Shown: positions 3,785-46,151, counted from the stretch's first letter. The stretch is DNA of 64,000 bases from IMGVR_UViG_3300044701_000569:186001-250000, one strand, 5' to 3'. The notes: a model not told the origin generated them from the sequence alone. A program made the numbers and translations.

Positions 3785-4499
3785 GAGCCCACTCCCTTTC
3801 TTTACACCAGAAACATTTTCCGCAAACAGGAACATACTGTCCTGAAACATAAGTTTTATAATCTAAGTCACCAAAAGTTTCAGGATAGTTTATTTTATCG
3901 CCTTCACAGCTTCTAGTCAAGTTTAATAAGTCTGTTATGTTATTTTTAAAATACTGATTTATTATCCAATTTTTTCTTGTATGAATAAAGGGATGACATA
4001 CAGTAACTCCCATGTGTTGTATAATAGGATCTATATGACCCTCATCTCTGTCGTCTAGAGATCCGTCAATTTCAATATCGGGGTTAAGATTAACAGCAGC
4101 AAACCAAGCATCTAGTTGTTCTCTATGAGCAATATATTCGTTATGAGCTCTAAGAATTATTTGATTACCAGATTTTAATTTTCCGTATTCGTCAACAATA
4201 TTAGGACCAGTAGATCCCCACTCTAGTTCTGGAGGTATAAAACCTTCGTGCCTAAAAAAACGATTTTTAAATCTATTTTGAAGCCAATTATACACATCTA
4301 AACTGTTTTGTCTTTGCCAGGGTCTTGTTTTCCAACAACGAATCTGTGTAATGATATGAATATCTGCACTAGTGTTCATACATATTAAATAAGCTAATAA
4401 GGCACTATCTGCCCCACCGCTTAAACTTATTCCTATCCGTGACCAATTAGGATCAATAGGCAAGATTACGTCGTCATATTTAACAGAAGGAATATTCAT
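3774..4499 (-). CDS. QueC-like PP-loop ATP pyrophosphatase (adenine nucleotide alpha-hydrolase)
   Basis: SLSGGADS PP-loop, TRSCE, and CGKCFWC Zn motif. Start set at the ATG 5 nt downstream of TAAATA. Confidence 0.7.
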   Translation of the reverse strand: MNIPSVKYDDVILPIDPNWSRIGISLSGGADSALLAYLICMNTSADIHIITQIRCWKTRPWQRQNSLDVYNWLQNRFKNRFFRHEGFIPPELEWGSTGPNIVDEYGKLKSGNQIILRAHNEYIAHREQLDAWFAAVNLNPDIEIDGSLDDRDEGHIDPIIQHMGVTVCHPFIHTRKNWIINQYFKNNITDLLNLTRSCEGDKINYPETFGDLDYKTYVSGQYVPVCGKCFWCKEREWALGK

Positions 4500-4542
4500 G
4501 CAAGTATTTATCGACATAAACTGCGCAGATAATAAATATATG
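4500..4542. promoter_or_regulatory. Divergent pair of T4-late-like TAAATA promoters
   Basis: TATTTA 4505-4510 (minus) and TAAATA 4533-4538 (plus), each 4-5 nt from an ATG. Confidence 0.65.
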
Positions 4543-5217
4543 ATGCTAACTAAAACAGGTTATACAGTTCCAAAAGAATTAATGGATCGTACATCAATAG
4601 ATCCAAAATCAATTGATGAAAAATTTACCATTAACACTCCTACGGGTAATTTCTTTTATGATCCGTGGGAAATTAAACCAGAATTTAAAAATACGATATG
4701 GAATGAAATATTAGAAACACTACCATATCCTAAAGGTGAAGCTAGACTTTTAGTTTTAGATTCTGGAAAAAACTATTTTGGCCACGCAGACATTGATGAT
4801 AGGTGGCACTTAAATATCTGCGGAACTTATAGTTTTCTTGTAGATTTAGATACAAATATGCTGCACAAAACTGACAATGATATGACATGGTATTTAATGG
4901 ATGCTGGCAGATTACATTCTGCTGCTAATTTTGGAGATAAACCGCGAGTACAGTTAGTAGTTAGAAAACTTTTAAATCGTTCAACAAAGGATTTAGTATC
5001 AATTCAGATAACTCCTACAAAGAAAAGTTTTGACACTAGATACAGATTTGATCAAACACTAAGCCCGTGGCTCAATAGAGCATCTAAAAATGGAGATATT
5101 GATAATTTTCAAATTACTTCTAATGGTGTACAGCTTGATCTTGCTGTAGATAGGATTAATGAATTGTTAGAAGTTTGCGGAACTGAATTTTTAACTACCA
5201 TCTTGGGTACTTGTTAA
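4543..5217 (+). CDS. Asp/Asn beta-hydroxylase-like Fe(II)/2OG oxygenase
   Basis: ARL...HADID (HxD), RLHSAAN (distal His), RVQLV. Start is ATG 4540 or 4543. Confidence 0.7.
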   Translation: MLTKTGYTVPKELMDRTSIDPKSIDEKFTINTPTGNFFYDPWEIKPEFKNTIWNEILETLPYPKGEARLLVLDSGKNYFGHADIDDRWHLNICGTYSFLVDLDTNMLHKTDNDMTWYLMDAGRLHSAANFGDKPRVQLVVRKLLNRSTKDLVSIQITPTKKSFDTRYRFDQTLSPWLNRASKNGDIDNFQITSNGVQLDLAVDRINELLEVCGTEFLTTILGTC

Positions 5218-5746
5218 GCTCAGCATAAAACTTATCAGGAAATAACTCCCATACTGTTTGTTGAGTTCCTCGATAGAATATCTCTTTTATTTTTTTCATT
5301 TGTCCTGATTTTTCCATAGCAGGACCAAATATTCTATGCACTAGGCGTTGTGTGCCTGCAGAATTTTCGTTAGAAGTTATAAACAACTTACTACCTTTAG
5401 GAGCCCAGTCTATACAGGTAGGAATTAAAAACTGACTAGTAACATGCTGATGTGTAATTATTTGGTTAACTGTCCTAAGAGAGGTTACTGGAATTTCATC
5501 ACTGAATGCACAAGTCCTAGCAGCTATACGATAGCAGTTTTCTCCCATTTCGTCAAAAGAGTGTGCTGCAACACTGCCTACAGGTTTGTTATTATAGTAG
5601 AGTATCCATACCTGCCATTCTCTTTCTTTTTTAAAACAATCAACTAGTAGTTTTTGAGAAGCATTATTTTCAAAACCTTTGGCAGCAGCTTTTGTATAAA
5701 ATTCATCTAGATCTAAGTCTTTAGTCCAAGGAACTATTTTATACAT
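5195..5746 (-). CDS. Hypothetical protein, possible GNAT-fold acyltransferase
   Basis: 183 aa ORF. The WILYY..KPVG...RIAARTC pattern is GNAT-like but weak. Confidence 0.35.
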   Translation of the reverse strand: MYKIVPWTKDLDLDEFYTKAAAKGFENNASQKLLVDCFKKEREWQVWILYYNNKPVGSVAAHSFDEMGENCYRIAARTCAFSDEIPVTSLRTVNQIITHQHVTSQFLIPTCIDWAPKGSKLFITSNENSAGTQRLVHRIFGPAMEKSGQMKKIKEIFYRGTQQTVWELFPDKFYAELNKYPRW

Positions 5747-6429
5747 TCGTTTACTCTACTAACAAAGTTGTCCGGGTAATTTGTTCTAAAACTCATCCAG
5801 CAAAGTTTTTCTAGCTGATTTAACGGCGCCGGAGCAGTCCAATTCATTCCTAAAGACTCTACTGTTTGTTTTAGATTGGCCTTTCTGTCTTCACTTAGAT
5901 GACTTTGATGTTTCTCTATACTTATAAATCCTTCATTGTGATGATAGGTAAAGAAATAATTAATACTTTTAAGTTTACCATCTACTATAAAGTAACTGCT
6001 AGGATGCATTGAATACTTGTATAAGTTTAGAGACTTATGGGCTTGAATAATTTCTAACATTTGTTCTTCCCAGTTTGGCAATACCTTAGAGTAATTTTCT
6101 GTAAGGCAACCTGCTTGCTCCCAAAAATCAGATCCGTCAATGTTTAAATAAATCTTTTTTTGAACATAGTCTATATCTAGTATTTGAGGAATATGCATTG
6201 GAAATGAATTGTTCATCACTGTTAAAAATTTAACTTCTCTTTCCCATTTTTCCTCCATAAGTTCAGGATCAATTACCTGATTTTGACCTTTATGGTAATC
6301 TGTGTCGTTATGATACCATTGTACAAATGTTTTCTTATCTTTACTGATAAGACTAGTATAAATTAAGTTGTTTCTACAAAGTCCTTTACCAGGAACATTG
6401 TTGTAGTAGTATTCAAATTCTGTGTTCAT
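5734..6429 (-). CDS. Protein-kinase-like fold protein (atypical)
   Basis: WEREVKFL, IPQILDID, LYKYSMHPSSYFIVDGKLKSINY. Similar to 9748-10311; no canonical HxD. Confidence 0.5.
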   Translation of the reverse strand: MNTEFEYYYNNVPGKGLCRNNLIYTSLISKDKKTFVQWYHNDTDYHKGQNQVIDPELMEEKWEREVKFLTVMNNSFPMHIPQILDIDYVQKKIYLNIDGSDFWEQAGCLTENYSKVLPNWEEQMLEIIQAHKSLNLYKYSMHPSSYFIVDGKLKSINYFFTYHHNEGFISIEKHQSHLSEDRKANLKQTVESLGMNWTAPAPLNQLEKLCWMSFRTNYPDNFVSRVNECIK

Positions 6430-6437
6430 AATAGTAA

Positions 6438-7739
6438 TTATGCTACTAGATTATTAGAACGATTTAGATTGAAAGGCATTTCAAACCACACACTATTTGT
6501 AGAATCAAGTAGTCTTTGAATTTTTTCTCTAGTTGAAATAATTTCTTCTTTTGAATATATTACATGTGTAAATGGATACACAGTTAAAATTGTGCTTGTA
6601 CCTAATAGTGTATTTTCTTCAAAATGAGTTTCAAGTTTGCTAAAATCTTTTATAATATCACATTCGATAAATTCAACAGTAACAGACTGTTTAAATTCTT
6701 TCCAATTAGCAAGAATTTTTTCTCTAACAAGATCTCTAGTATCAACCGAATTTTTTATATCAATGTCAAACGTAGGTTCAATTGGTAAGTTACAAGTTTT
6801 AGCATAATCCTGCATGAACGAATCGTAGTCGTTGCCGTCCCATTCTGTGTATAGTTTTTTCTTAAAGTTTAAATTATGTAAGTTCTTATCATACAACACA
6901 ATATTTTTAGCTCCAGAATTTACTGCACACAGCTCTCCAAGAAAACCTGTAGCAGGACAAATTACTTTTTTTGCTGGCACTGACGGAGCAAATTCATATT
7001 GCCATCCGTTAAGGACATTAAATTTTAAAACCTGTTGTATTATTTTAATAAACAGTTCTTGAGAGTCGTCTAACCCTTCTACTAGTTCTATTTTTTTAAG
7101 TGCTTCTGCAAATGCTTCAGTACTCTTTTTTGGATACAGAAAACCTCTACTAGGTAGTACAACATCTTTTAAGTAATCATTAGCTGTTTTAGGATAGCGC
7201 CATTCTTGATCCCAATTACGTACCTCAAAATTATTTTTAAGACATTCTTCGATAACTCGTGTTCCAAATTTTAAATCTCTGTTTACAGTCTTTCCGCCTA
7301 ATGTTATGTACAGCGGAGCATGACCATCGTGCATGTCTTCGTAACTGCGAATTAAATTGAATCCTTGATCCTTGCCACCATTAAATTCTAATTTTTTAAA
7401 TGCAGCAGTTCTCAATATAAAAAATTGTTCGTGAAAGTACGGGGTAGTATCATAATCATATTGAAGTAAGTTTGCAATTAAACCTACAGTCTCTGGTATA
7501 GAATGCATCTTGTTATAGATGTGATCTCTTTCTACTATCACAGTACCTGCAGACGCTACTACAAGAAACTCTGCTGAAGTTAAATAATCGTTTATTTCAT
7601 TATAGGATGATAATGTGTGGACAGGATATTCGCCTATGTTGAGAATATCGATAAATGCTTGCGTAATCTGAAGCATCTTTTCATCCAACCAATCATCACT
7701 AGAAAAGCTCGGTACTATAAGAAAATTGACCTTGTGCAT
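6438..7739 (-). CDS. Hypothetical protein (433 aa), possibly a two-domain transferase
   Basis: Long ORF in operon. The C-terminal PATGFLG...VLYD...IECDI resembles a Rossmann/methyltransferase pattern, weakly. Confidence 0.5.
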   Translation of the reverse strand: MHKVNFLIVPSFSSDDWLDEKMLQITQAFIDILNIGEYPVHTLSSYNEINDYLTSAEFLVVASAGTVIVERDHIYNKMHSIPETVGLIANLLQYDYDTTPYFHEQFFILRTAAFKKLEFNGGKDQGFNLIRSYEDMHDGHAPLYITLGGKTVNRDLKFGTRVIEECLKNNFEVRNWDQEWRYPKTANDYLKDVVLPSRGFLYPKKSTEAFAEALKKIELVEGLDDSQELFIKIIQQVLKFNVLNGWQYEFAPSVPAKKVICPATGFLGELCAVNSGAKNIVLYDKNLHNLNFKKKLYTEWDGNDYDSFMQDYAKTCNLPIEPTFDIDIKNSVDTRDLVREKILANWKEFKQSVTVEFIECDIIKDFSKLETHFEENTLLGTSTILTVYPFTHVIYSKEEIISTREKIQRLLDSTNSVWFEMPFNLNRSNNLVA

Positions 7740-8355
7740 TTTGTTCCTTTATTGCTAACTCAAATAAATTTTTCCATTTAGGCGTAGAATCATAATGATG
7801 TACTATAAGATGATATCGATCTTCGTTACTGTCATTTTTAATAGAATGGGTATAGCTAATGTTCATAGCATAAGCATCACCCGGTTTAAATTCTAACGAT
7901 TCTCCATCCTCCCAATACCATTTACAATTTTGAGGGTTTGTTATTGCTATGTTTATAGCACCTAGTACTGGATATTCTGTGTCTTTATGTGGTTCTATAT
8001 AACCACCTGGTTCTAGTAACATAAATCTAACCCTAGCATAACTAGAGCTAGGATAAACGTTCTTAAGCCATTCAACAGTTACTGGACATTTCTCAGCTAT
8101 GTCTGTATACTGCATATATGGTGCGGCATCTCTAGCTGTATTAAACTCTTTGTATTGATCCCATGCGTATGGTTCTTCGCTGCTCTTACCTATAATAGGT
8201 AATGAATACCATCCTTTTGTTTTATATGTTGATCTATATTCAACAAACTTAGATCTTAAAGCACTAGCTTCTTGTGCAATAAGTTCGTGAGGAAAATCTA
8301 AATTTAATTTTAGATATTTGGCATTACTTAAAAAATATTCTCTACCTTCAAACAT
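7699..8355 (-). CDS. Asp/Asn beta-hydroxylase family Fe(II)/2OG oxygenase
   Basis: RVRFMLLEPGGYIEPHKD, THSIKNDSNEDRYHLIV. Confidence 0.85.
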   Translation of the reverse strand: MFEGREYFLSNAKYLKLNLDFPHELIAQEASALRSKFVEYRSTYKTKGWYSLPIIGKSSEEPYAWDQYKEFNTARDAAPYMQYTDIAEKCPVTVEWLKNVYPSSSYARVRFMLLEPGGYIEPHKDTEYPVLGAINIAITNPQNCKWYWEDGESLEFKPGDAYAMNISYTHSIKNDSNEDRYHLIVHHYDSTPKWKNLFELAIKEQNAQGQFSYSTELF

Positions 8356-8394
8356 GAAATATTTACCTTTAAAATTGTAGGCATAAATATTTTC
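8356..8394. promoter_or_regulatory. Divergent pair of TAAATA late promoters, quasi-palindromic
   Basis: TATTTA 8360-8365 and TAAATA 8384-8389, 4 and 5 nt from their ATGs. Confidence 0.65.
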
Positions 8395-9210
8395 ATGATT
8401 AGAGGAATTAATAACAAACCGTACGTAAGTCTAGATCCTTATATTGACATAGAAGGATTTAAACAACTTCATCCTGAAATTTGCAAAGGCTTTGCACAAG
8501 CTAGAGACTATGCTAAAGAAGGAACTTGGATGCAGCCAGGATTTGACCCCAAAGACTGTAGCTATATTGTAGATTGGAAACCTATTTACAAAGCATTTGA
8601 AGAATATCAAAAATTGCCTGATACCGATCCTATTAAAATACATGGCAATGAAATATTTCCTAATGATTTTAAAGATTATAAACAGCGTAATTTGTTTACA
8701 CGTTACTTAAAAAGCACGTTAGGTGCTAATGACCCTTATATCTATTATTTTCTTTGGAATGAAGGCGACTGGAATGAGCGTAATGCTGAACGTCAACGTA
8801 CTGAAGAGAGTAAATTCTTTCCAGGTGTAGTTAAGTGGGTTGAAGGGTTACAGGAACAAGGTATAATTGATCGTATAGGTCGCGTTATATTTTTTCACTG
8901 TGATCATAACGGTAAAGCATTTGAACATAGAGATTTAGATGCTAAAAATGGTATACATACTAATAATCAGTATACACCTCATAACAATGAATTCATCCAT
9001 ATACGCTATAGAACTAAAAGAGGGTTCTATATATGGGATCCAGACAGTCAGAATAAACACTATCTAAATTGCCATGCATCTTTTTGGAATGATCAAGATT
9101 GGCATGGCGGCGAAGAGTCTAAAGAAGTTGAATACGGACTGCGTATTGATTGTAAATTTAGTTTAGATTTAAAGAAGAAGTTAGGTATTGATCACCTAAC
9201 TCACTATTAA
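8395..9210 (+). CDS. Putative Fe(II)/2OG oxygenase (double-stranded beta-helix)
   Basis: GRVIFF...EHRD (HxD), DWHGG, GLRID. Confidence 0.6.
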   Translation: MIRGINNKPYVSLDPYIDIEGFKQLHPEICKGFAQARDYAKEGTWMQPGFDPKDCSYIVDWKPIYKAFEEYQKLPDTDPIKIHGNEIFPNDFKDYKQRNLFTRYLKSTLGANDPYIYYFLWNEGDWNERNAERQRTEESKFFPGVVKWVEGLQEQGIIDRIGRVIFFHCDHNGKAFEHRDLDAKNGIHTNNQYTPHNNEFIHIRYRTKRGFYIWDPDSQNKHYLNCHASFWNDQDWHGGEESKEVEYGLRIDCKFSLDLKKKLGIDHLTHY

Positions 9211-9755
9211 CCCCAAATATTAAAAAGATACTTTGGAGTAAGTCCTGCGTTGGCCCCAGCATGCCAACTTTTCCTGTCAGGCCATTCATAGACATTACCT
9301 TGTGCTTCGTTGTAAAGACAGGTATTTTCTACTATTACAATGTGTCCGGGTCTTGGAATATCAATATGACAATGAAATCTTCTAATTGTACCTTTAGCAT
9401 TAAGAGTATTTTCATCATCAGTGATGTCCCAGTGCCAGGGAGCTACATCTCCCGGTAGTACTTTACTGATCCAGCAGTTTATATAACTGTCCATGCCAAT
9501 AAAGTCCATAAACTTTTCTACTACTTCTTGGGGAAATTGTCTTCCTGGGAAATGCATTTCCCAGCTAGCATTGCCGCCTTCTGCCTTCATTTTATATCCA
9601 GCATTCCTTAGCGGTCTAGCTACTTCTTCTACACCCTCTACTGCATAACCTACATCGTGTCTAGGTCCTAAGTAACCAGGCATACTATTATCAACTGCCT
9701 CTATTACTTCGTTCCAATTGATAATGTGATTGCAATTACCTATAAATTTAAGCAT
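9207..9755 (-). CDS. Putative Fe(II)/2OG oxygenase (AspH-like)
   Basis: PGDVAPWHWD, RFHCHI, WHAGANAG. Confidence 0.65.
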   Translation of the reverse strand: MLKFIGNCNHIINWNEVIEAVDNSMPGYLGPRHDVGYAVEGVEEVARPLRNAGYKMKAEGGNASWEMHFPGRQFPQEVVEKFMDFIGMDSYINCWISKVLPGDVAPWHWDITDDENTLNAKGTIRRFHCHIDIPRPGHIVIVENTCLYNEAQGNVYEWPDRKSWHAGANAGLTPKYLFNIWG

Positions 9756-10311
9756 TCAGCGAAATAGGCCAATCGCCAGCATTGCTGTCTATAGAACGTC
9801 TGTAACTTGTTACTATGTCTAGGTATCCGTCAGTAAATTTGAACCTATCCCAGTTTCTAATTACATCATTAACTGTAGTGAGAGGAATCTTTTCGTCGCC
9901 TTTGCAACAGCCATAGAGATCGTGGATCTTTAATTTGTTATCCTTAACATACACTGTATGCGGATAAAAATTTAGTTTATAAAGATTATTACTTTCTAGA
10001 TCCTGTAGTAAGGATTTTAATTGCTGTACCCAATCGCTAGGCATCTCTCTACCAAAAAACAGTAAATGGCTCAAACTACTGTCATACCATTTGAAAGTTA
10101 TTTTTCTGTTGCCTTCGTCAACTGATTCTATTTCAGGAGCGTAATCTTTGCCTGCAATTAAATCTAATCCGTATAATTCTCTGCGGAACCAAAATTCCTC
10201 AAAGAATGTCATAGAATATGAAGTACTGTTATACTCGGCTTTATAAACATCGTTAGGAGTGCCGGGATATCCGTCACTACTGTATTTGTAAAAATCTTTA
10301 AATGTTTCCAT
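9748..10311 (-). CDS. Protein-kinase-like fold protein (atypical)
   Basis: FRRELYGL, APEIESVD, LKIHDLY. Paralog of 5734-6429. Confidence 0.5.
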   Translation of the reverse strand: METFKDFYKYSSDGYPGTPNDVYKAEYNSTSYSMTFFEEFWFRRELYGLDLIAGKDYAPEIESVDEGNRKITFKWYDSSLSHLLFFGREMPSDWVQQLKSLLQDLESNNLYKLNFYPHTVYVKDNKLKIHDLYGCCKGDEKIPLTTVNDVIRNWDRFKFTDGYLDIVTSYRRSIDSNAGDWPISLNA

Positions 10312-10348
10312 GTTTATATTTAACCCTATTCTAACTCACCCGCCTTAA

Positions 10349-12073
10349 TTAAGGCTCAACAGCCATTTGTCTCCAACCACCGCCTAGATAAACTACCATC
10401 TGCTGTTTAGCTGGAGCACCAATGCCTAATGGATCCCATCCGCTTACAGAGTCACCGTCAGCAATAGCTACCATACCGTTGACTGGTGTTGCTGGTGCAG
10501 CACTTAACACTGCTAGTTTGGCAAATCCGTTGATGTCAAGAGTTGCTTCTGCTTCATAACCTAGTGTGTGATTAATTGAAGTATAACCTCGAGAATCAAT
10601 ATTAACGCCTTTAGGATTTAAAGGATTACCGTCAGTAAATGTTAATAAAGAAATACTTCCAGGTACTTCTCCTTCGTCAACTACGGCATTAGGATCAACA
10701 CTGCGTAGAATGATGCTGGATAGCGTGTAACTTGCAGTGCCTTCACCGGTAAGTGATATGCCGTCGTAACCTAGTGCAGCATCAATCTTAATTGTATCAC
10801 CAACTTGAATTGCTGTAGGAGCACTAAGTGTTCCACGTGATGATCTAAATGTTTCGCCTGGGCCAAAGAACCCTTGAGTAATACCGTTAGTGATATTAAC
10901 AAAATCACCGTCTGGGCATAGTCTTATAATTTGAGTAGTTCTTGTTGGATCTGTATTTTGTATTCTAATTGGAATAGATGATTCGATAATACTGTTACTA
11001 AAAGACATCGTTGATGTTCTTAAGATCGAGTTTACACCATCAACTAGTACTGTAGAATCATCACCAAAGAATGATCCTTTAAATGCAGAAGCTTCAACTT
11101 CGCCGTCAAACACTGCACTACCATTAACATCTAGAGCAGCTCTAGCAAAAAACTCTAAAGGTTGATTAATAGCAGTAAATCCTCTAGAGTCTATTATTAG
11201 ACCTTTATATGCACTAGTATTGCTATCTGCAAATGTTAATAGCTGTATGCTACCTGGAATTTCTCCTGCAGCAACTGACACATTATAATCTACACTGTGT
11301 CTAATAGCACTTGAAAGTGTATATACAGGATCGCCCTCACCATCAACTGATACGCCGTCGTAGCCTAGAGCAACATCAATTTTAATTGCATCACCAACTG
11401 TAAGATTAGTTGGTGCAGCTAGTGTCCCTCGAGACGCTCTAAAACTTTCACCTGGTCCTAAAAATCCTTGGCTTATACCCGTTGTAATAGCAGAGAATCC
11501 ACCGTCAGGCGCTGTTCGTATAAAGTTTAGAGTTACTGCTGGGTTATCGTGTTTGAATACTAATGCTGCAGAAGTACTGTTAACAGTAAATCCGGAAATG
11601 TCTAATATACCTGTAGAAAGAGTTTTTGTAGTAGAATTTACTAAAACTGTACTATCTGTAGCTTCTACATCTCCAATGTGCGTGCCGTCTGTATCACCTG
11701 TAACGTTACCAATTACATTACCATTAAGCGTACCATAAAAGTTTGATGTTACTGAGTCAACAACAATTTGATCAGTTGCATTAGTAATATCAATGTGATA
11801 ATCACCACCAGGTGTAAAAGCACCTTCATCTGCTGCTACAAACGCTGTACCGTTAAATTTTAGTATTTGTCCTGTTAGCGCAGGAAGTGTAAGATCTACG
11901 TCTAACAGATCATTAAGAGATTGAGCTATGCCAGAGTTTACTACAATACCGCCAACAGTGCTACCGTCACCTACCCACAAACGTTTAGTATCTGTAGTAT
12001 AGACAAGCTCGCCTTCTGTGGGCGTAATTAGTAATCTTTGTGCATTAGTTCCGCGTCTGAGACGTAAGGCCAT
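10349..12073 (-). CDS. Tail fibre / virion appendage protein with Mtd-N / hyaluronidase-N-like anchor
   Basis: N-terminal LRLRRGT...EGELVYTTDTKRLWVGDG; G/T/S-rich beta composition; TAAATA and GGGAG upstream. Confidence 0.75.
   Translation of the reverse strand: MALRLRRGTNAQRLLITPTEGELVYTTDTKRLWVGDGSTVGGIVVNSGIAQSLNDLLDVDLTLPALTGQILKFNGTAFVAADEGAFTPGGDYHIDITNATDQIVVDSVTSNFYGTLNGNVIGNVTGDTDGTHIGDVEATDSTVLVNSTTKTLSTGILDISGFTVNSTSAALVFKHDNPAVTLNFIRTAPDGGFSAITTGISQGFLGPGESFRASRGTLAAPTNLTVGDAIKIDVALGYDGVSVDGEGDPVYTLSSAIRHSVDYNVSVAAGEIPGSIQLLTFADSNTSAYKGLIIDSRGFTAINQPLEFFARAALDVNGSAVFDGEVEASAFKGSFFGDDSTVLVDGVNSILRTSTMSFSNSIIESSIPIRIQNTDPTRTTQIIRLCPDGDFVNITNGITQGFFGPGETFRSSRGTLSAPTAIQVGDTIKIDAALGYDGISLTGEGTASYTLSSIILRSVDPNAVVDEGEVPGSISLLTFTDGNPLNPKGVNIDSRGYTSINHTLGYEAEATLDINGFAKLAVLSAAPATPVNGMVAIADGDSVSGWDPLGIGAPAKQQMVVYLGGGWRQMAVEP
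10526..11657 (-). repeat. Tandem ~200-aa internal duplication in the tail fibre gene
   Basis: DSTVLV...GI(S/T)QGF.GPGE.FR.SRGTL.APT...GD.IKID.ALGYDG...YTLSS...G(E)xPGSI.LLTF.D...IDSRG...LD(V/I)NG occurs twice, about 597 nt apart. Confidence 0.9.
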
Positions 12074-12104
12074 CTTTGTAACTCCCGGTATAGTATGTTA
12101 CAAG

Positions 12105-12110
12105 TATTTA
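12105..12110 (-). promoter_or_regulatory. TAAATA late promoter for the tail fibre gene
   Basis: CATAAATAC about 30 nt upstream of the ATG at 12073. Confidence 0.6.
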
Positions 12111-12124
12111 TGCCTTTTTAGGAT

Positions 12125-12436
12125 TTACCTACGACGTTTCATGAAGCGTTTTGTACGATCCTGTACGTCTTTTTTAACTTTTGCTGTATTAAGATTAAAG
12201 TCTACGCTTTCAATTAGCTCGTCGTGTTCTTTAAAGAACTCGTCTAAAATCTCTTCTACAGATTCTATAGTAATTCCACGTTTTCTACGTAGATCAATAT
12301 TCCACTGACGCCCGTCTTTAAAGTGTACATTTACACCTTGCAAATACTCTATTGGTATTGCTTTTATTTCAACATCTTCAAATATTTCGGGCCAATGATC
12401 TATTATTTCTTGCGGTAGCTTATTATTTTTAGGCAC
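12125..12436 (-). CDS. Hypothetical phage protein
   Basis: 103 aa ORF tightly coupled to its neighbour. Confidence 0.7.
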   Translation of the reverse strand: MPKNNKLPQEIIDHWPEIFEDVEIKAIPIEYLQGVNVHFKDGRQWNIDLRRKRGITIESVEEILDEFFKEHDELIESVDFNLNTAKVKKDVQDRTKRFMKRRR

Positions 12437-36536: not shown

Positions 36537-36538
36537 GA

Positions 36539-40203: not shown

Positions 40204-40212
40204 GTTTAATCC

Positions 40213-40773: not shown

Positions 40774-40783
40774 AGCTGTAGCC

Positions 40784-41128
40784 TTAGTGATTTAATCTTA
40801 TGCTGTTGACAGTCCCGTCAGTGAACAGTAGCTTTGCTCTAAGCCATACATAGTTTCCTGTAAAGTTAGCAATTCTACTGCCAGTTTCGTCGTTAGCAGA
40901 ATATGAATGCACTTCAAACCAATCATCTTCTATTGGATCCAGTACTAGAGTAGCTTGGATTATAATATCACCAGAAAGTCCGGTATATGTATATTGGACT
41001 GTGTGCAATCCATCACTGCGTCCGTAATAACCGTCACCCTTAAAAGGGAGACCTACAACAGTAGCTAAATCGCTGTTAGCTGGTGTATGTGTATATTCTG
41101 ATAGTATAATTTCACTGTTAGTCGTCAT
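40784..41128 (-). CDS. Small beta-rich protein, probably structural
   Basis: KGDGYYG..DGLHT...NFTGNYVWLRA; ATG 5 nt after TAAATA. Confidence 0.6.
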   Translation of the reverse strand: MTTNSEIILSEYTHTPANSDLATVVGLPFKGDGYYGRSDGLHTVQYTYTGLSGDIIIQATLVLDPIEDDWFEVHSYSANDETGSRIANFTGNYVWLRAKLLFTDGTVNSIRLNH

Positions 41129-41819
41129 ACTTATATTTATCAATATCGCCCTTGTAGACTATTTTGTCTACTTTGCGTATTGCATGACCTATAAGCATCT
41201 CAACTAGCGACATAACACGGTCGTCACGTACATAAATGTAACTTCCGTTCGCAAATCCATTACCAATATCTTTAAGTGTTTTAGGACCTACTTTTACTTT
41301 GTCAGTGTTAGATTTTAACCAATTGTAAGCATTAGCATCAAGCCTCTTGTAGGATAAGTGTACTTGATATTGATAAGAACTGGGATAATTTACAATTATT
41401 AAGTTTTCTTTGCGCGAAAGAAGATCAACTGCTTCCGGGCTTGGTTCCCAAAACTCCTTAACACTTACACGCATTTTATTAGAAATTTTCATTAAAAGAC
41501 TTCTATTGCTACTGTATATGTTAAGTGTATTAGATTCGCATCTTACTTTATAGTCACTGGCTTTTTTTAAGATATTGTAAATATCCTTAGCATCAAAAAA
41601 TGCGTCCTCAGTTATTTCTACTGTAGATCTATATGTGGTCTTAGTTAAGGGTTCACCTGCTTTATGCTGTGCTGTTAGAGTATCTAATCTAACTTTAGCA
41701 TGAGCTAACTTTTTATCAGAATTTGAATCTGATCTAAAAATTGTAGCCAGCGGATTGGAAAGTACCAGTTTGTACAGGTACTTTCCGTGATGCAGTTTTT
41801 TAGTTTCAAACAGTCTCAT
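41118..41819 (-). CDS. Hypothetical protein
   Basis: About 233 aa ORF downstream of clpA; start 41819 or 41831. Confidence 0.65.
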   Translation of the reverse strand: MRLFETKKLHHGKYLYKLVLSNPLATIFRSDSNSDKKLAHAKVRLDTLTAQHKAGEPLTKTTYRSTVEITEDAFFDAKDIYNILKKASDYKVRCESNTLNIYSSNRSLLMKISNKMRVSVKEFWEPSPEAVDLLSRKENLIIVNYPSSYQYQVHLSYKRLDANAYNWLKSNTDKVKVGPKTLKDIGNGFANGSYIYVRDDRVMSLVEMLIGHAIRKVDKIVYKGDIDKYKYDD

Positions 41820-44052
41820 TAGCTGCTTCATTTACTACACAGTCCAATTTGATTTCGTTTTCACGATAGTCAACAGTTACACTGCCCCCATTCTTTAAAT
41901 CACCAAACAGTATCTGTCTTGACAAGGGACGCTTAATCTCTTTGTCAATAACACGCTGTAGAGGTCTTGCACCCATCTTAGGGTCAAATCCCTTATCTAC
42001 TAGATAGTCTAATGCTTCGTCAGTAATTGAGATAGCAATGTTCTTTTCCTTGACCATTTGCTTGAGTTCTAACAGGAACTTGCCTACAATCTTCATCATA
42101 GTTTCCTTGCTCAACTTAGCAAACGTAATTACACCGTCTAGTCTGTTGCGGAATTCAGGTGCAAAGAATTTCTTAAGCTCACTGTCATTGTAGTTGCCTT
42201 CAATTGAATCATTAAATCCAATCTTGTTCTTTTCAGCTTCCTTAGCGCCTAGGTTAGTGGTAAGGATTAGGATACAGTTTCTACCATCAGCTTCCTTGCC
42301 ATTTGAACCTGTTACTTTACCGTTATCCATCAACTGTAGTAGGATTTGGCTAACATCAGGGTGTGCCTTTTCAATTTCATCCAGCAGTAATACACAGTTT
42401 GGATTTTCCTGTAGCTTGGTAATCAGCAAGCCTGCATTTTCTTCAAAACCAACATAACCAGGAGGTGAACCAATCAACTTGCTAACAGCATGCTTCTCTT
42501 GATATTCACTCATATCAAATCTTACTAGCTTGACACCGAGATGTTTAGATAGCTGTTTGGCTGTTTCGGTCTTACCTGTACCTGTTGGACCCATAAACAC
42601 AAATGCACCTACGGGCTTGTCATCTGCTTTTAGACCAGCTTGGCTAACAAGTATCTTGTCAACAATGCTTTCAATAGCATCATCCTGTCCATATACACCC
42701 TGCTTGAGGTTGTTTTCTAGGTTCACAAGATTTTCTGTTTCTCTTTCTGCTACTTGTTCAGCAGGAAGATTAACAATCTTAGCCAGTTCGTATTGAATTT
42801 CAGCAGCGCCTACAACCTTATTGTCCTTTTGATTCTTGAGCTTGAATCTTGAACAAGCAACGTCAATGAGGTCAATAGCCTTGTCCGGCAGCTTCTTATC
42901 ACTCTGATACTTCACACTGAGTTTGACTGCTGCTTCAATTGCAGCGTCAGTAATTTCTGTCTTGTGATAGTCTTCATAATACTTCTTAATACCTTGTAGG
43001 ATATCTTTAGTAGTTTCTGGAGAAGGCTCATCTACAGTTACTCTCTGGAATCTGCGCATCAGCGCACGATCCTTTTCAAAGTACTTGCGGTATTCTTCCC
43101 AAGTAGTACTTGCTACTACCTTCAAGTCGCCTTTGGTAAGAGCTGGCTTGAGCATGTTAGCGAGATCATTAGCACCACCGCTGCCACCAGCACCAGCACC
43201 ACTCATCATGTGTGCTTCGTCGATGAACATGATAGTCTTACCCTGCTTAGTTAGAGCCTGTAGCACTAACTTGAAGCGTTCTTCAAAGTCGCCTCGATAC
43301 TTAGATCCTGCCAGCATTGAACCAATGTCTAGTACATAAACACTGTAGTCCTGCAGAAACTCCGGTACGTCCTTGTTTACAATCTTATATGCAAGTCCTT
43401 CTGCAATGGCAGTTTTACCTACACCGGGATCACCGACCATTAGCACATTGTTCTTTGAACGACGTCCTAGTGCTAGTGCAATAGAATCTAATTCTTCACT
43501 ACGACCAATAATAGGATCAATCTTGTTACGCTTTACTTCGTCATTTAGATTAGTAGTAAACGCTCTCAATGCCCTTCGAGCTTCGCTGCTGATAGAATTA
43601 TCCTCTTCAACTTCCTCTTCAACTTCGTTATTAAGAAATTCAGCAAACTTGTCTTTTACAATGTTAGCCTCATTAAGATAATATACAGCTATGCTACGTT
43701 TTTCAGTTAGCATGCTAAGAAGTACGTCGGATAAATTAATATGATTTCGACCATTAAACAATGTTTGCGTAAATGCTCTATTAAGCACACGCTCAACTGC
43801 TTGTGTTTTCTTAGGCTTAAACTTTTCTAGCTCTGTCTTTAAGTCATCACAATTAGTCTTTAAATGATGCTCTAAATTTGTTTTGATAAAGTTAACGTCA
43901 CTGCCATACATGGACAATACATTGACAAAATTTTCCTCACAGAGCATAGCATAGAGAAGATGCTCTAGAGTAACATATTCATGCTTTAACTTCTGAGCAT
44001 CTTTAACTGCTTTATCAAATACTAATGTTAACTCTTCTGATGGTTCGACCAT
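41806..44052 (-). CDS. clpA: ATP-dependent Clp protease ATPase subunit, ClpA-like
   Basis: N-domain HEYVTLEHLL; two AAA modules (GDPGVGKT, GPTGTGKT); GSPPGYVG; IGF loop; no ClpB middle coil. Confidence 0.92.
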   Translation of the reverse strand: MVEPSEELTLVFDKAVKDAQKLKHEYVTLEHLLYAMLCEENFVNVLSMYGSDVNFIKTNLEHHLKTNCDDLKTELEKFKPKKTQAVERVLNRAFTQTLFNGRNHINLSDVLLSMLTEKRSIAVYYLNEANIVKDKFAEFLNNEVEEEVEEDNSISSEARRALRAFTTNLNDEVKRNKIDPIIGRSEELDSIALALGRRSKNNVLMVGDPGVGKTAIAEGLAYKIVNKDVPEFLQDYSVYVLDIGSMLAGSKYRGDFEERFKLVLQALTKQGKTIMFIDEAHMMSGAGAGGSGGANDLANMLKPALTKGDLKVVASTTWEEYRKYFEKDRALMRRFQRVTVDEPSPETTKDILQGIKKYYEDYHKTEITDAAIEAAVKLSVKYQSDKKLPDKAIDLIDVACSRFKLKNQKDNKVVGAAEIQYELAKIVNLPAEQVAERETENLVNLENNLKQGVYGQDDAIESIVDKILVSQAGLKADDKPVGAFVFMGPTGTGKTETAKQLSKHLGVKLVRFDMSEYQEKHAVSKLIGSPPGYVGFEENAGLLITKLQENPNCVLLLDEIEKAHPDVSQILLQLMDNGKVTGSNGKEADGRNCILILTTNLGAKEAEKNKIGFNDSIEGNYNDSELKKFFAPEFRNRLDGVITFAKLSKETMMKIVGKFLLELKQMVKEKNIAISITDEALDYLVDKGFDPKMGARPLQRVIDKEIKRPLSRQILFGDLKNGGSVTVDYRENEIKLDCVVNEAANETV

Positions 44053-44053
44053 A

Positions 44054-44881
44054 TTAATCGTTTTCCTTTTTTATACTTTTATTTAAGTCCTGCAACTTTT
44101 GATACACTTCTGGATCTGACATATCAGGCATTATCGGATCAATTTTTACAAATACTTTACCTTTTTTTCTAGTATGCAAATCTGGAATACCATAATCTGC
44201 TATACTAAAAGTTGTGCCTGGTTTGGTGCCTTTAGGTATTGTTAGTTGAACTGTTCTTTCATCTAACGTTGTCACTAGTATAACACAACCTAACAAAATG
44301 TCAAACAAAAATACTTGTTGAGATGTGTACAAATCATTGCCATCTCTCCGCCATCCATCTATATCAAAAACTTGTATTTTAATAAAAAGATCACCGCGTT
44401 GAAATCTAGGATCTCCGTCATCACCTAGTCCAGTATAGCGCACTGTGTCACCGTTTCTTGCACCTGGTGGAATATCAACTTCTACAGTTTCTTGTTTTCC
44501 AGAACGAAGTCTATAAGATACTATTAGTTGTTTTCCAAGTATAACATCTTTTAAATCAATTCTAGCGAGAACTGTGAGGTCTCTGTTTTTAGGAGCGCCT
44601 CGACCCATACCAAATTGTGAAAATATATCTCCAAAAGGACTGCCATTCCCAAAAGGATTTTGATTAGCCCAGCCAGGATTTTGCCATTGTGTTTGCGGAT
44701 TATCGTAGTTAGCTTTTTTATCAGGATCGCCTAGTGTGTCATATGCTTCATTTATTTTAGCAAATGTATTGTGATCCCCGCCGCGGTCGGGATGATGCTG
44801 CATCGCTAGTTTGCGATATGCTCTTTTTATTTCTTCTGGCGAAGCTGTTCGTGAGACGCCCAGCGTACTGTAGTGATCCAT
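44054..44881 (-). CDS. DnaJ-class chaperone without zinc finger (CbpA-like)
   Basis: J-domain with HPD, G/F-rich linker, C-terminal DnaJ domain. Confidence 0.92.
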   Translation of the reverse strand: MDHYSTLGVSRTASPEEIKRAYRKLAMQHHPDRGGDHNTFAKINEAYDTLGDPDKKANYDNPQTQWQNPGWANQNPFGNGSPFGDIFSQFGMGRGAPKNRDLTVLARIDLKDVILGKQLIVSYRLRSGKQETVEVDIPPGARNGDTVRYTGLGDDGDPRFQRGDLFIKIQVFDIDGWRRDGNDLYTSQQVFLFDILLGCVILVTTLDERTVQLTIPKGTKPGTTFSIADYGIPDLHTRKKGKVFVKIDPIMPDMSDPEVYQKLQDLNKSIKKEND

Positions 44882-44928
44882 GCTAATACTTAGCTGACCT
44901 GTACGCTGGGCGTGGTGTTAGTGAAAGA

Positions 44929-45405
44929 TTAGTTTCTACCTTCTACTTTTTCTTTAGTACGACCGTATGCAGCAATACCAAGTACAGCACCCATAGCAAT
45001 GTGATATAGGCCTGCGCCCTGAAGCGTTAGCGGTTGCCATTGGCTTGTTACTTGCCCGCCTTGTACTGCCTGTAATAGGCTCCAAAGGATTGGGAATATA
45101 ACAAAGTCAAATGTACAAGTTCCCATGTACAACCAACCCATAGCTGGACGCCATTTCTTGTTGATCCAATCTTCGTTTGTGTTCTTAACTAGGACGTCCG
45201 CGTCCCCTACATTATTACTCATATCTGCCCTCGCTGCTGGCGGGGTATTTCTAAATCCACTGACAGAGTCACTGTCCCCCCTACGTGTTGTAATTACAGT
45301 TTCTTCATACTTAGGTGCTGAAGCTGCTGCTGAAAAACTTGATGATGTTGAACTAGAACCAAAACTGTTAGCAGGTTCTAGATCTTCTGGCTTTAATCTA
45401 GGCAT
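44929..45405 (-). CDS. Putative holin (3TM / GTA-holin-like)
   Basis: KWRPAMGW followed by TM segments, LGIAAYGRTKEK; TAAATA and AAGGAGG upstream. Confidence 0.65.
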   Translation of the reverse strand: MPRLKPEDLEPANSFGSSSTSSSFSAAASAPKYEETVITTRRGDSDSVSGFRNTPPAARADMSNNVGDADVLVKNTNEDWINKKWRPAMGWLYMGTCTFDFVIFPILWSLLQAVQGGQVTSQWQPLTLQGAGLYHIAMGAVLGIAAYGRTKEKVEGRN

Positions 45406-45436
45406 GTTCCCTCCTTAATTACCCTTGCGCAAGTAT

Positions 45437-46141
45437 TTAGCGCAATTTGGCTAATTTAAATGCTCTGAAAATGCAGAACCACATCCATCCTATATCAAAT
45501 TCAAACCAACGACGGCTAAGTTTAGGGTTTGCAGGATCTAAATGATGATTATTATGAAGTTCTTCACCGCCTATTATAATGCCCCAAGGACTTACGTTAC
45601 GACTATGATCCTTAGTGTTACCATTGCGATAACCCCACCAGTGTCCTATACCATTAATAAAGCCTGCTGCCCAGAATGGAATCCATATCATCTGTACACC
45701 CCATACTAGAAAACCCCATAGCCCAAATAATAACAGATCTATAATTAGCATTAAAAAAATGCCTAGTCGATGATGCGGAGTATATAATTTTCTTTCAATC
45801 CAATCTTTTGGAGTACCAACACCATATCTAAGTACAAACTGCGGATCTTTGGTAGCTTCGTGATAAAGACTCCAACCGCCAAATAATAATTTCCAAATGC
45901 CAAATACATGAGGACTATGCGGATCACCGTTTATATCAGTGCTTTGATGATGTTTACGATGTACAGCCACCCATGCTTTAGTAGTCATACCTGTTGTAAG
46001 CCATAGCCAAAAGCGCATGAAATGCTCAACAATTGGATGAAATATAATTAATTTATGTGCTTGGCTACGGTGCAGATAAAGGGTAACACATATAATAGTA
46101 ATATGTGTCATAATAAGGGTCGCGAGTAATAAAGTTATCAT
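45437..46141 (-). CDS. Acyl-lipid (delta-9-type) fatty acid desaturase
   Basis: His boxes HRSQAH, HRKHH, HNNHH; TM segments. Confidence 0.92.
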   Translation of the reverse strand: MITLLLATLIMTHITIICVTLYLHRSQAHKLIIFHPIVEHFMRFWLWLTTGMTTKAWVAVHRKHHQSTDINGDPHSPHVFGIWKLLFGGWSLYHEATKDPQFVLRYGVGTPKDWIERKLYTPHHRLGIFLMLIIDLLLFGLWGFLVWGVQMIWIPFWAAGFINGIGHWWGYRNGNTKDHSRNVSPWGIIIGGEELHNNHHLDPANPKLSRRWFEFDIGWMWFCIFRAFKLAKLR

Positions 46142-46151
46142 CTAGTATTTA

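What the first reader, a model, noticed from the sequence alone, without database searches (positions are those of the whole stretch)
4499..46151. Systematic leaderless late genes: TAAATA-N4/5-ATG
Seen: nine starts lie 4-5 nt after TAAATA or a one-base variant, with no convincing SD. They are 4499(-), 4543(+), 6429(-, TAATTA), 8355(-), 8395(+), 10311(-), 41128(-), 44881(-, TAAGTA) and 46141(-). Established: T4 late promoters (TATAAATA) start transcription a few nt downstream of the motif. Inference: transcripts begin at or next to the AUG, so each accessory gene is an autonomous 'promoter+ATG' cassette. This would explain the easy insertion and inversion of genes in the tailoring cluster and could make them resistant to stress-altered translation. 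Several major structural genes instead have leaders with an SD.
Basis: partly seen in the sequence, partly recalled or inferred. Interest (0 to 1): 0.62.

Follow-up and report, generated by a model that had tools for sequence, protein, structure and literature searches.

The report
Late promoters fused to start codons
In this uncultured 358-kb freshwater jumbo phage and its relatives, about thirty genes carry the phage's T4-type late promoter core (TAAATA) exactly 4-5 bases before the ATG. Their late mRNAs therefore most likely begin at the start codon and are translated without a ribosome-binding site. I found no report of this design in T4-type phages, and it stays unproven until transcript 5' ends are mapped.

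Summary
All nine sites are at the stated coordinates, and they are the complete set of TAA[A/G/T]TA-N4/5-ATG gene starts in the window. The window's raw count alone is not significant (7 against 3.8±1.7 in shuffles). The genome settles it: 28 TAAATA copies sit 4 or 5 nt before an ATG that opens an ORF of at least 60 aa, none sit at N6, and 2 at N7-N12. A second class lies at N13-N40 with a Shine-Dalgarno (SD) leader.

- **Replication:** the N4/N5 peak recurs in three related contigs. It is absent from T4, PA5oct, 121Q, Atu_ph07 and a Vibrio jumbo phage.
- **Conservation:** upstream of the large terminase, 53 of 58 distinct relatives keep terminator, T-run, motif, a variable 4-5 nt spacer and ATG.
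- **Promoter identity:** the genome encodes a gp55-type late sigma. In T4 the motif ends at -6, so N5 puts +1 on the A of ATG.
- **Class features:** SD at background level, pyrimidine at -1 in 26 of 29 genes, almost only ATG starts, weakly structured 5' coding ends, and enrichment at divergent junctions and just after terminators.

The class includes terminase and tail tube, not only accessory genes. No transcription start site (TSS) data exist. Verdict: probable leaderless late genes, a new variant of known kinds.

The parts
4497..4510 (-). TAAATA (4505-4510), 5-nt spacer, ATG (4497-4499) of a 241-aa QueC-like protein (ORF 3774-4499). It is one half of a divergent pair with the next entry.
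4533..4545 (+). TAAATA (4533-4538), 4-nt spacer, ATG (4543) of a 224-aa protein (4543-5217). The G002 orthologue (45% identity) has TAAATA-N5-ATG with the same N-terminus.
6427..6440 (-). Variant TAATTA (6435-6440), 5-nt spacer, ATG (6427-6429) of a 231-aa protein (5734-6429).
8353..8365 (-). TAAATA (8360-8365), 4-nt spacer, ATG (8353-8355) of a 218-aa Asp/Arg beta-hydroxylase-like protein (7699-8355). An SD-like AAAGG lies directly upstream of the motif. Divergent partner of the next entry, with a 39-nt gap.
8384..8397 (+). TAAATA (8384-8389), 5-nt spacer, ATG (8395) of a 271-aa protein (8395-9210). The G002 orthologue (56% identity) has an AGGAG SD instead.
10309..10322 (-). TAAATA (10317-10322), 5-nt spacer, ATG (10309-10311) of a 187-aa protein (9748-10311).
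41126..41139 (-). TAAATA (41134-41139), 5-nt spacer, ATG (41126-41128) of a 114-aa protein (40784-41128). The G001 orthologue (59% identity) keeps TAAATA-N5-ATG.
44879..44892 (-). Variant TAAGTA (44887-44892), 5-nt spacer, ATG (44879-44881) of a 275-aa DnaJ-like protein (44054-44881). The J domain starts at residue 2. The G001 orthologue (47% identity) keeps TAAGTA-N5-ATG.
46139..46151 (-). TAAATA (46146-46151), 4-nt spacer, ATG (46139-46141) of a 234-aa fatty-acid-desaturase-like protein (45437-46141). The -1 base is G, one of three exceptions to the pyrimidine rule.
63454..63478 (-). Leadered comparison class: TAAATA (63473-63478), 18 nt containing an SD, ATG (63454) of a 1174-aa protein.
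59899..59923 (-). Leadered class: TAAATA (59918-59923), N18 with SD, ATG (59899) of a 194-aa protein.
51023..51042 (-). Leadered class, shortest spacing in the window: TAAATA (51037-51042), N13 with SD-like AGGA, ATG (51023) of a 184-aa protein.
45405..45439 (-). Leadered class: TAAATA (45434-45439), N28 with GGAGG, ATG (45405) of a 158-aa holin-like protein.
12073..12110 (-). Leadered class: TAAATA (12105-12110), N31 with SD, ATG (12073) of a 574-aa protein with an Mtd_N domain, probably a tail fibre.

Best explanation
TAA[A>G,T]TA, usually preceded by G-(A/G), is the -10-like core of this phage's late promoters. It is read by host RNA polymerase carrying the phage's gp55-family sigma. In roughly a third of the promoter copies that lie close to a gene, the motif sits 4-5 nt before an ATG. 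Transcription would then start on, or within about one base of, the A of the start codon. The resulting leaderless mRNA would be bound by ribosomes through its 5'-terminal AUG rather than through an SD pairing. The remaining promoters lie at least 13 nt from the ATG and carry an ordinary SD in a short leader.

The fused form is a minimal promoter-plus-start unit. It fits into 38-43-nt divergent gaps and directly behind terminators.

Shown: the motif, its spacing, its conservation, its contexts and the sigma gene.

Inferred: the position of the 5' end, the late timing, and the translation mechanism. A further inference is that, without an SD, these genes are translated well only from their own late transcript and not from read-through RNA.
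For: 1. **Spacing.** In G000, N4=9 and N5=19, N6-N12 is almost empty, and a second class lies at N13-N40 with an SD. The same peak occurs in G001 (5, 15), G002 (2, 9) and G003 (3, 7).
2. **Specificity.** Only TAAGTA and TAATTA among the 18 single-base variants share the peak. Codons found at N4/5 are ATG 38, GTG 1, TTG 0.
3. **Sigma.** A gp55-family protein is encoded (phrog_12791 E=1e-77, phrog_234 E=2e-24). T4 residues N13 and Y97 are kept, and H95 is F (residue roles from PMC7892883).
4. **Geometry.** T4 TATAAATA spans -13 to -6 (PMC2988020, PMC7892883), so N5 places +1 on the A.
5. **Same promoter family.** Both the N4/5 and the leadered copies have G and A/G before TAAATA, whereas other copies in the genome have T-rich flanks.
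6. **Late genes.** N4/5 precedes the large terminase, tail tube and virion proteins. The leadered class precedes tail fibre and baseplate wedge genes.
7. **Contexts that need their own promoter.** 10 of 29 members sit at divergent junctions with gaps of 25-76 nt, and 7 junctions have motifs in both directions. Four follow a terminator whose T-run ends 14-38 nt before the ATG.
8. **Conservation.** Upstream of terminase in 58 distinct relatives (80-97% amino-acid identity): 32 N5, 15 N4, 5 TAAGTA-N5, 1 TATATA-N4. Motif columns are invariant except the fourth, the spacer is variable, and spacers of 3 or 6 never occur. Three relatives have an SD instead. In G001-G003, 20 of 31 orthologue pairs keep the motif at N4/5, and others switch to TAAATA plus SD leader or to SD only.
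9. **Leaderless signatures.** A strict SD occurs in 4 of 29 members, against 56% of other genes and 11% of internal ATGs. A pyrimidine is at -1 in 26 of 29 against 185 of 417 (p=1e-6), and in 45 of 46 N5 sites pooled. The first 40 nt are less structured (-2.2 against -3.3 kcal/mol, p=3e-5, n=79 against 639).
10. **Start codons are real.** The J domain starts at residue 2, family alignments start at residues 1-3, and terminase codons 2-4 are conserved through AGT/TCA serine switches.
Against: - No 5'-end data exist. The only RNA hits are two short metatranscriptome contigs inside genes, which could even be DNA carry-over.
- The N4 class needs initiation 5 rather than 6 nt after the motif.
- Four N4 members, including 8355, have an SD-like AAGG or GAGG about 10 nt upstream.
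- Eight tandem members lie 15 nt or less from the upstream gene, so translational coupling on polycistronic RNA is also possible.
- Positions -13/-12 differ from T4's TA.
- gp33 and gp45 homologues were not detected by single-sequence search.
- The leadered class shows only a weak pyrimidine/purine signal at the predicted start.
- The host is unknown, so the efficiency of leaderless translation in it is unknown.
- 'Late' timing is inferred from gene content only.
Confidence: 0.68

Rival explanations
1. SD-independent initiation on longer transcripts. Transcripts start well upstream, and UAAAUA just before the AUG acts in the RNA as an A/U-rich, unstructured ribosome (S1) landing site that replaces the SD.
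For: The class lacks an SD. The region around the start is AT-rich and weakly structured. Eight members lie 15 nt or less behind an upstream gene and could sit on polycistronic RNA.
Against: - An A/U-rich enhancer would not demand one hexamer with a single tolerated position, nor a spacer of exactly 4-5 nt with N6-N12 empty.
- The same motif with the same flanks occurs at N13-N40 in front of normal SDs.
- Divergent pairs with 38-43-nt gaps and starts 14-18 nt behind terminator T-runs still need a promoter, and no other motif is present. Sigma-70-like matches are below shuffle expectation in 3500-12500.
- The motif is avoided genome-wide, as in T4.
Confidence: 0.12
2. Mixed mode for a subset. 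The four A/G-AGGTAAATA-N4 genes (window 8355; genome 66441, 135326, 311988) are translated mainly through a weak SD at about 10-nt spacing. The overlapping TAAATA is an additional or incidental promoter.
For: AAGG or GAGG lies immediately 5' of the motif in exactly these four members. Orthologues of 135326 and 311988 have plain SD-led or TAAATA-N18-SD starts in relatives.
Against: All three orthologues of 66441 keep TAAATA at N4/5 while the G-rich flank changes. At the 8355/8395 divergent junction, motifs are the only shared elements in a 39-nt gap. If transcription starts at the ATG, the SD is not in that RNA.
Confidence: 0.3
3. RNA-level operator or processing site. UAAAUA-N5-AUG is bound by a RegA-like translational repressor, or cut by a phage endoribonuclease, and so regulates a gene set after transcription.
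For: From memory, unverified here: T4-family RegA proteins bind A/U-rich sequences around start codons. The motif sits at a fixed distance from the AUG.
Against: No RegA homologue was found, though only by single-sequence search. The gene set is dominated by structural and late-type genes, not early replication genes. The same motif occurs at many distances in front of SD leaders. This reading does not explain divergent and post-terminator contexts or the presence of a gp55-type sigma.
Confidence: 0.04
4. Chance in AT-rich DNA, or a by-product of TAA stop codons of upstream genes.
For: The raw count in the window alone is within the range of shuffles. The genome is 38-39% G+C.
Against: The genome-wide raw count is 30 against 14.5±3.2 in Markov simulations. 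Nearly all N4/5 ATGs open long ORFs, while N3 and N6 do not. The pattern is replicated in three relatives and absent in five outgroups. It is conserved across 58 terminase loci. The motif's TAA can be the upstream stop in only 2 of 19 tandem cases (gaps of 7 or 8 nt).
Confidence: 0.02

Closest known systems
Phage T4 late promoters (TATAAATA, gp55/gp33/gp45-dependent)
   Same: An 8-bp -10-like box with no -35 element, ending at -6. It is read by a gp55-family sigma, precedes structural genes, works on either strand, and its core hexamer is avoided elsewhere in the genome (PMC2988020, PMC7892883).
   Different: Here the first two positions are G-(A/G) rather than TA, and the fourth core position tolerates G or T. 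No gp33 or gp45 homologue was detected. In T4 no gene-like ATG lies closer than 13 nt to TATAAATA, whereas here about a third of gene-proximal copies sit at N4/5.
Predicted ATAAATA late promoter of the Rak2-like jumbo phages CBB and GAP32
   Same: The same core motif, predicted upstream of structural genes in related jumbo myoviruses that also encode a gp55-like sigma and lack detectable gp33/gp45 (PMC5259590).
   Different: The text I read does not report fusion to start codons. The related 121Q genome shows no N5 excess (6 against 11 control). CBB itself was not scanned.
Leaderless middle and late transcripts of Thermus phages (YS40, Lalka27a)
   Same: Most phage transcripts start with the A or G of the initiator codon, from phage-specific -10-type promoters (bioRxiv 10.64898/2026.04.20.719267).
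   Different: Those are a different phage lineage with a different promoter consensus (TAGGGT in Lalka27a). From memory, their host commonly uses leaderless mRNAs. Here most phage genes use a clear SD, and only about 6% are of the fused type.
Lambda cI mRNA from PRM, the classic leaderless mRNA
   Same: A 5'-terminal AUG with no SD; 70S ribosomes bind through the terminal AUG (PMC10491246; Brock et al. 2008, as cited in PMC5312081).
   Different: That is a single regulatory gene from a sigma-70 promoter, not a genome-wide class tied to a phage sigma.
Poxvirus late promoters (TAAAT-G initiator overlapping the ATG)
   Same: From memory, unverified here: a late-promoter core that resembles TAAATA and directly abuts or overlaps the start codon.
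   Different: That is a eukaryotic virus with its own polymerase, and its transcripts acquire poly(A) heads. The resemblance is an analogy only.

Membership tests
T4-type (gp55-dependent) late promoter | The phage encodes a gp55-family late sigma factor. | tested here: met
   G000:125394-126242(-) matches phrog_12791 (E=1e-77) and phrog_234 (E=2e-24), and T4 gp55 at E=1.6e-6. N13 and Y97 are conserved and H95 is F.
T4-type (gp55-dependent) late promoter | A -10-like TATAAATA box with no conserved -35 element. | tested here: inconclusive
   The core TAAATA is invariant in terminase relatives, and no conserved element lies further upstream apart from the terminator. Positions -13/-12 are G-(A/G) rather than TA, and full TATAAATA occurs only 8 times. 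This is a variant consensus, as reported for Aeh1 (PMC2988020) and CBB (PMC5259590).
T4-type (gp55-dependent) late promoter | It precedes late (virion, packaging) genes. | tested here: met
   Terminase, tail tube, virion proteins, tail fibre and baseplate wedge genes. It also precedes non-structural genes: DnaJ, desaturase, hydroxylase.
T4-type (gp55-dependent) late promoter | Co-activator gp33 and sliding clamp gp45 are present. | tested here: not met
   No match to T4 gp33 or gp45 at E<=10. These were single-sequence searches only, so divergent homologues are not excluded. CBB gave the same result (PMC5259590).
T4-type (gp55-dependent) late promoter | Transcription starts about 6 nt after the box and is active late in infection. 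| not testable with these tools
   Only Logan contigs of metatranscriptomes were available, with two short internal pieces.
Leaderless mRNA | The transcript's 5' end coincides with the start codon. | not testable with these tools
   Inferred from T4 geometry and from contexts without room for a leader. There is no 5'-end mapping.
Leaderless mRNA | No Shine-Dalgarno sequence upstream. | tested here: met
   A strict SD occurs in 4 of 29 members, against 235 of 417 other genes and 11% of internal ATGs.
Leaderless mRNA | The start codon is AUG, since leaderless initiation depends on a terminal AUG. | tested here: met
   Codons at N4/5 that open long ORFs just after a stop: ATG 38, GTG 1, TTG 0, any other codon 4 or fewer.
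Leaderless mRNA | An unstructured 5' end. | tested here: met
   The first 40 nt fold at -2.2 against -3.3 kcal/mol for SD-led genes, p=3e-5. Lower G+C contributes to the difference.

The most novel reading that the evidence does not exclude
Promoter-gated translation in a T4-superfamily phage. Because these genes have no SD, they are translated efficiently only when their AUG is the 5' end of the RNA, that is, only when the phage's own late sigma fires the fused promoter. Read-through or antisense-overlapping RNA stays silent. The phage-encoded ribosomal protein bS21 sits behind a TAAATA-N23 promoter and contacts the anti-SD region of the ribosome. It would retune host ribosomes late in infection in favour of these leaderless messages. 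This would be a coupled transcription-translation switch shared by a large, globally distributed clade of uncultured jumbo phages.
Probability: 0.12. Interest if true: 0.8.

Novelty: new variant of a known kind. Interest (0 to 1): 0.57.

Why it matters
T4-type late transcription and leaderless translation are each well known. I found no report of their systematic fusion, in which about 6% of genes, including the terminase and a tail tube protein, carry it, in the T4 superfamily or in the jumbo phages with mapped transcripts; phiKZ and AR9 have none.

- **Gene calling.** If the reading is right, start calls in this abundant uncultured clade need a new rule: an SD is not required, and the motif marks the start. 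The PA5oct terminase start looks mis-called for a related reason.
- **Genome layout.** It gives a compact explanation for single-gene inversions and very short divergent gaps.
- **Engineering and experiment.** It offers a 14-nt promoter-plus-start module. It also makes testable whether phages gate translation through the choice of transcription start, and whether phage-encoded bS21 plays a part.

Tried and rejected
- **RNA evidence.** One search found 20 DNA holders and no RNA holder.
- **Near-identical phage records.** None in the phage collection.
- **Sigma-70-type promoters in 3500-12500.** 25 found against 35±6 expected. One 9/12 match ends at 8375, upstream of 8395, at chance level.
- **PA5oct, the closest isolate (terminase 55% identical).** It shows no TAAATA-N4/5 excess and no other fixed-offset non-SD motif. 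Its published RNA-seq therefore cannot be transferred, and the paper reports only sigma-70-like promoters (10.1101/406421).
- **bS21 as the clade-specific cause.** Rejected as a simple correlate. The gene is also in PA5oct, Atu_ph07 and the Vibrio phage, which lack the N4/5 peak.
- **Other factors.** IF3, RegA, gp33 and gp45 were not found.
- **A at +4** (reported to stack on A1493 in the lambda cI complex). By eye 15 of 29, against 49% in all genes, so no enrichment.
- **A 3rd-order Markov simulation** timed out and was replaced by a 2nd-order one.
- **Not used.** The large protein searches, structure prediction and complex prediction, because the claim does not rest on them.

Full report
**What the window is.** The window is bases 186,001-250,000 of a 357,559-bp IMG/VR virus record that is rated complete. 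G+C is 38-39%. Its family-B DNA polymerase is 43-46% identical to those of Atu_ph07, Phosso, a Vibrio jumbo phage and the 121Q/PBECO4 group. Its large terminase is 55% identical to that of Pseudomonas phage PA5oct. It is therefore an uncultured jumbo myovirus of the distant T4 superfamily. DNA runs that hold it come from freshwater, lake, wetland and 'fungus' metagenomes in 13 studies. Most of its genes have an ordinary Shine-Dalgarno (SD) sequence: G is enriched at -11 to -8, and AGGAG is the commonest upstream word.

**Checking the observation.** A scan for TAA[A/G/T]TA-N4/5-ATG that opens an ORF of at least 60 aa finds no further site in the window.

The raw window count is not significant on its own: 7 exact matches against 3.81±1.74 in dinucleotide shuffles, reached by 7 of 100 shuffles. 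What makes it non-random is where the ATGs are.
- Across the genome, TAAATA occurs 269 times, and ATG follows at N5 21 times and at N4 9 times, against about 5 at other offsets.
- The N4/N5 ATGs almost all open long ORFs just after an in-frame stop. N3 and N6 ATGs open ORFs of 2-32 codons.
- Counting only ATGs that open ORFs of at least 60 aa, the profile is 9 at N4, 19 at N5 and 0-2 at every other offset from N0 to N12.
- A 2nd-order Markov simulation gives 14.5±3.2 raw matches against 30 observed.

**A second spacing class identifies the motif as a promoter.** With my own gene calls (439 genes), TAAATA-to-ATG distances peak at N4 (8), N5 (12) and N18 (10), with smaller peaks at N21, N23 and N28. 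Only two sites fall between N6 and N12. The N13-N40 copies have an SD between motif and ATG. They precede an 1824-aa tail fibre, two baseplate wedge proteins and several tail-fibre-like proteins.

This distribution is what a promoter whose transcripts start a few bases downstream would give. Either the ATG is at the start of the RNA, or there is room for an SD. A leader of 1-7 nt serves neither purpose.

Other points agree:
- TAAATA is the rarest of the 15 A4T2 hexamers in this genome, in three relatives and in T4, with observed/expected of 0.63-0.72. 32% of copies lie in the 7% of the genome that is intergenic.
- Both spacing classes share a G and an A/G immediately before TAAATA, while the remaining copies have T-rich flanks.

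**The sigma factor and the geometry.** The genome encodes a 282-aa gp55-family protein (phrog_12791 E=1e-77, phrog_234 E=2e-24, T4 gp55 E=1.6e-6). It keeps T4 residues N13 and Y97 and has F for H95. In the T4 open-complex structure these residues hold the flipped bases at -9 and -12 (PMC7892883).

The T4 box TATAAATA runs from -13 to -6. The review speaks of A(-13) variants, and the structure places adenines at -12, -9 and -8 (PMC2988020, PMC7892883). TAAATA-N5-ATG therefore puts +1 exactly on the A of the ATG. N4 requires initiation one base closer. In T4 itself no gene-like ATG lies closer than 13 nt to TATAAATA, so the fused class is not a T4 feature. A related motif, ATAAATA, has been predicted as the late promoter of the jumbo phages CBB and GAP32, which also have a gp55-like sigma and no detectable gp33 or gp45 (PMC5259590). 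I likewise found no gp33 or gp45 by single-sequence search.

**Properties of the N4/5 class.** The class has 29 genes with ORFs of at least 45 aa.
- A strict SD core is present in 4, all of the form A/G-AGGTAAATA-N4 and including window site 8355. The comparison figures are 235 of 417 other genes and 11% of internal ATGs.
- The base before the ATG is a pyrimidine in 26 of 29, against 185 of 417 (Fisher p=1e-6), and in 45 of 46 N5 sites pooled over four genomes. From general knowledge, bacterial polymerase prefers a pyrimidine at -1 and a purine at +1. I read this as selection for precise initiation on the A.
- Codons at N4/5 that open long ORFs are ATG 38, GTG 1, TTG 0.
- The first 40 nt fold more weakly than those of SD-led genes (-2.2 against -3.3 kcal/mol, p=3e-5, 79 against 639 genes in four genomes).
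- Ten members sit at divergent junctions with gaps of 25-76 nt, in a genome with only 18 such junctions. After correcting three first-ATG calls, seven junctions carry a motif in each direction, including 4499/4543 and 8355/8395 in the window.
- Four members follow a terminator whose T-run ends 14-38 nt before the ATG.
- The motif's TAA can be the upstream gene's stop in only 2 of 19 tandem cases.

**The class is not confined to accessory genes.** It includes the large terminase, a tail tube protein, two virion structural proteins and a tail-fibre-like protein. In the window it includes a QueC-like protein, an Asp/Arg hydroxylase, DnaJ and a fatty-acid desaturase. The start codons are credible: the J domain begins at residue 2, and several family alignments begin at residues 1-3.

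**Comparative evidence.** In 58 distinct upstream sequences the layout is a terminator hairpin with compensatory stem changes, a T-run, G-(A/G/T), the motif, a spacer, then ATG.
- The counts are 32 TAAATA-N5, 15 TAAATA-N4, 5 TAAGTA-N5 and 1 TATATA-N4. Five lack the motif, and three of those have a clear SD.
- Five of the six motif columns are invariant, and the fourth is A or G. The spacer varies freely in sequence but is never 3 or 6 nt.
- Codons 2-4 are conserved as protein through AGT/TCA serine switches.

Three long related contigs reproduce the N4/N5 peak. T4, PA5oct, 121Q, Atu_ph07 and Vibrio phage 2.275.O do not. PA5oct shows no alternative fixed-offset motif either.

Of 31 orthologue pairs with aligned N-termini (26-83% protein identity), 20 keep the motif at N4/5. 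For 41128 and 44881 the orthologue keeps the same motif, and 44881 keeps the same TAAGTA variant. Others have switched to TAAATA plus an SD leader (311988, 68191) or to an SD alone (8395, 135326).

**Mechanism and rivals.** The best reading is a gp55-type late promoter fused to the start codon, giving leaderless or near-leaderless late mRNAs. I put it at about 0.68, because the 5' ends have not been seen.
- The main rival is an A/U-rich RNA element on longer transcripts. It does not explain the hexamer specificity, the empty N6-N12 zone, the leadered copies with the same flanks, or the contexts that need a promoter.
- A RegA-like operator is unlikely, given the gene set and the absence of a RegA homologue.
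- For the four AGGTAAATA-N4 genes a weak SD may contribute.
- Eight closely packed tandem members could also be translated by coupling.

**RNA data.** Two metatranscriptome runs from one study gave two short contigs inside genes 7699-8355 and 9748-10311. These show at most that RNA libraries contain these genes. A 5%-diverged population variant differs once in the 4500-4542 gap, at 4526, outside both motifs. That is too little to weigh.

**What is known.** Leaderless late transcripts are documented for the Thermus phages YS40 and Lalka27a (bioRxiv 10.64898/2026.04.20.719267). phiKZ showed none (PMC8244752), and AR9 has 5' UTRs of 26-491 nt (PMC5312081). The PA5oct transcriptome paper reports only sigma-70-like promoters (10.1101/406421). 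Four literature searches found no report of start-codon-fused T4-type late promoters. I therefore class this as a new variant of known kinds, specific to a large uncultured clade.

**Side finding.** The genome encodes ribosomal protein bS21 (Pfam E=1e-19). The gene has a GGAGG SD and a GTG start and lies third in a unit that begins with a TAAATA-N23 promoter. bS21 supports the anti-SD region, and ribosomes lacking it handle leaderless lambda cI mRNA differently (PMC10491246). Phage bS21 has been linked to late expression (PMC9723584). The gene also occurs in PA5oct, Atu_ph07 and the Vibrio phage, which lack the fused class, so any link is speculative.

Noticed in passing
G000:C1:332146-332400 (-), outside the window (L019:12146-12400): A phage-encoded ribosomal protein bS21 (Pfam PF01165, E=1e-19). 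It has a GTG start behind a strong GGAGG and is the third gene of a unit that begins at a TAAATA-N23 promoter (ATG at 334113). It is also present in G001, PA5oct, Atu_ph07 and Vibrio phage 2.275.O, and absent from 121Q and T4.
   Followed up: partly
window 657-4499: Three radical SAM proteins in a row (657-1655 +, 1636-2526 -, 2519-3850 -). The third carries a SPASM domain. Next come a QueC-like protein (3774-4499 -) and, further on, an Asp/Arg beta-hydroxylase-like cupin (7699-8355 -). This is a modification ('tailoring') cluster whose substrate is unknown.
   Followed up: partly
window 10349-12073 (-): A 574-aa protein with an N-terminal Mtd_N domain (major tropism determinant N-terminus, E=9e-10) behind a leadered TAAATA-N31 promoter. 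It is probably a receptor-binding fibre. I did not look for a diversity-generating retroelement.
   Followed up: no
window 41806-46141 (-): A chaperone and membrane block: a 748-aa ATP-dependent protease/Clp-like ATPase (phrog_4871, E=7e-255), DnaJ (44054-44881), a 3-TM holin-like protein (44929-45405) and a fatty-acid desaturase (45437-46141).
   Followed up: no
L104:1456-1490 (PA5oct NC_071039.1, about 128846-128880): The annotated terminase start of PA5oct lies inside the stem of the upstream terminator hairpin. The N-terminus conserved in relatives (M-A-A...) begins at an ATG 28 nt downstream, about 8 nt after the T-run, with no SD and no TAAATA. The start is probably mis-called, and this may be another leaderless-like start with a different signal.
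   Followed up: partly
window 59930-63454 (-): A 1174-aa protein behind a TAAATA-N18 promoter has no PHROG hit and no tblastn match in the phage collection.
   Followed up: no
window 4543-5746 and 8395-9755: The two single plus-strand genes (4543-5217 and 8395-9210) converge on minus-strand genes and overlap them by 23 nt and 4 nt, with no terminator between. Convergent transcription is therefore expected there.
   Followed up: no
window 6272-8878: Contigs of one lake metagenome join 6272 to 8878 and 6336 to 8574, skipping 2.2-2.6 kb of the cluster. This could be gene-content variation between populations, or a chimera or relative, since the sides are short (29 and 51 nt) and the likeness threshold was 85%.
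   Followed up: no
G000 N4 sites; pooled data: 82% of N4 sites have C directly after the motif (TAAATAC), against 15% of N5 sites. This may be what shifts the start by one base. It is unexplained.
   Followed up: no
window 13583-14854 (-): A 423-aa protein matches an HNH endonuclease family (phrog_1314, E=1e-111). It lies 39 nt behind a TAAATA copy.
   Followed up: no
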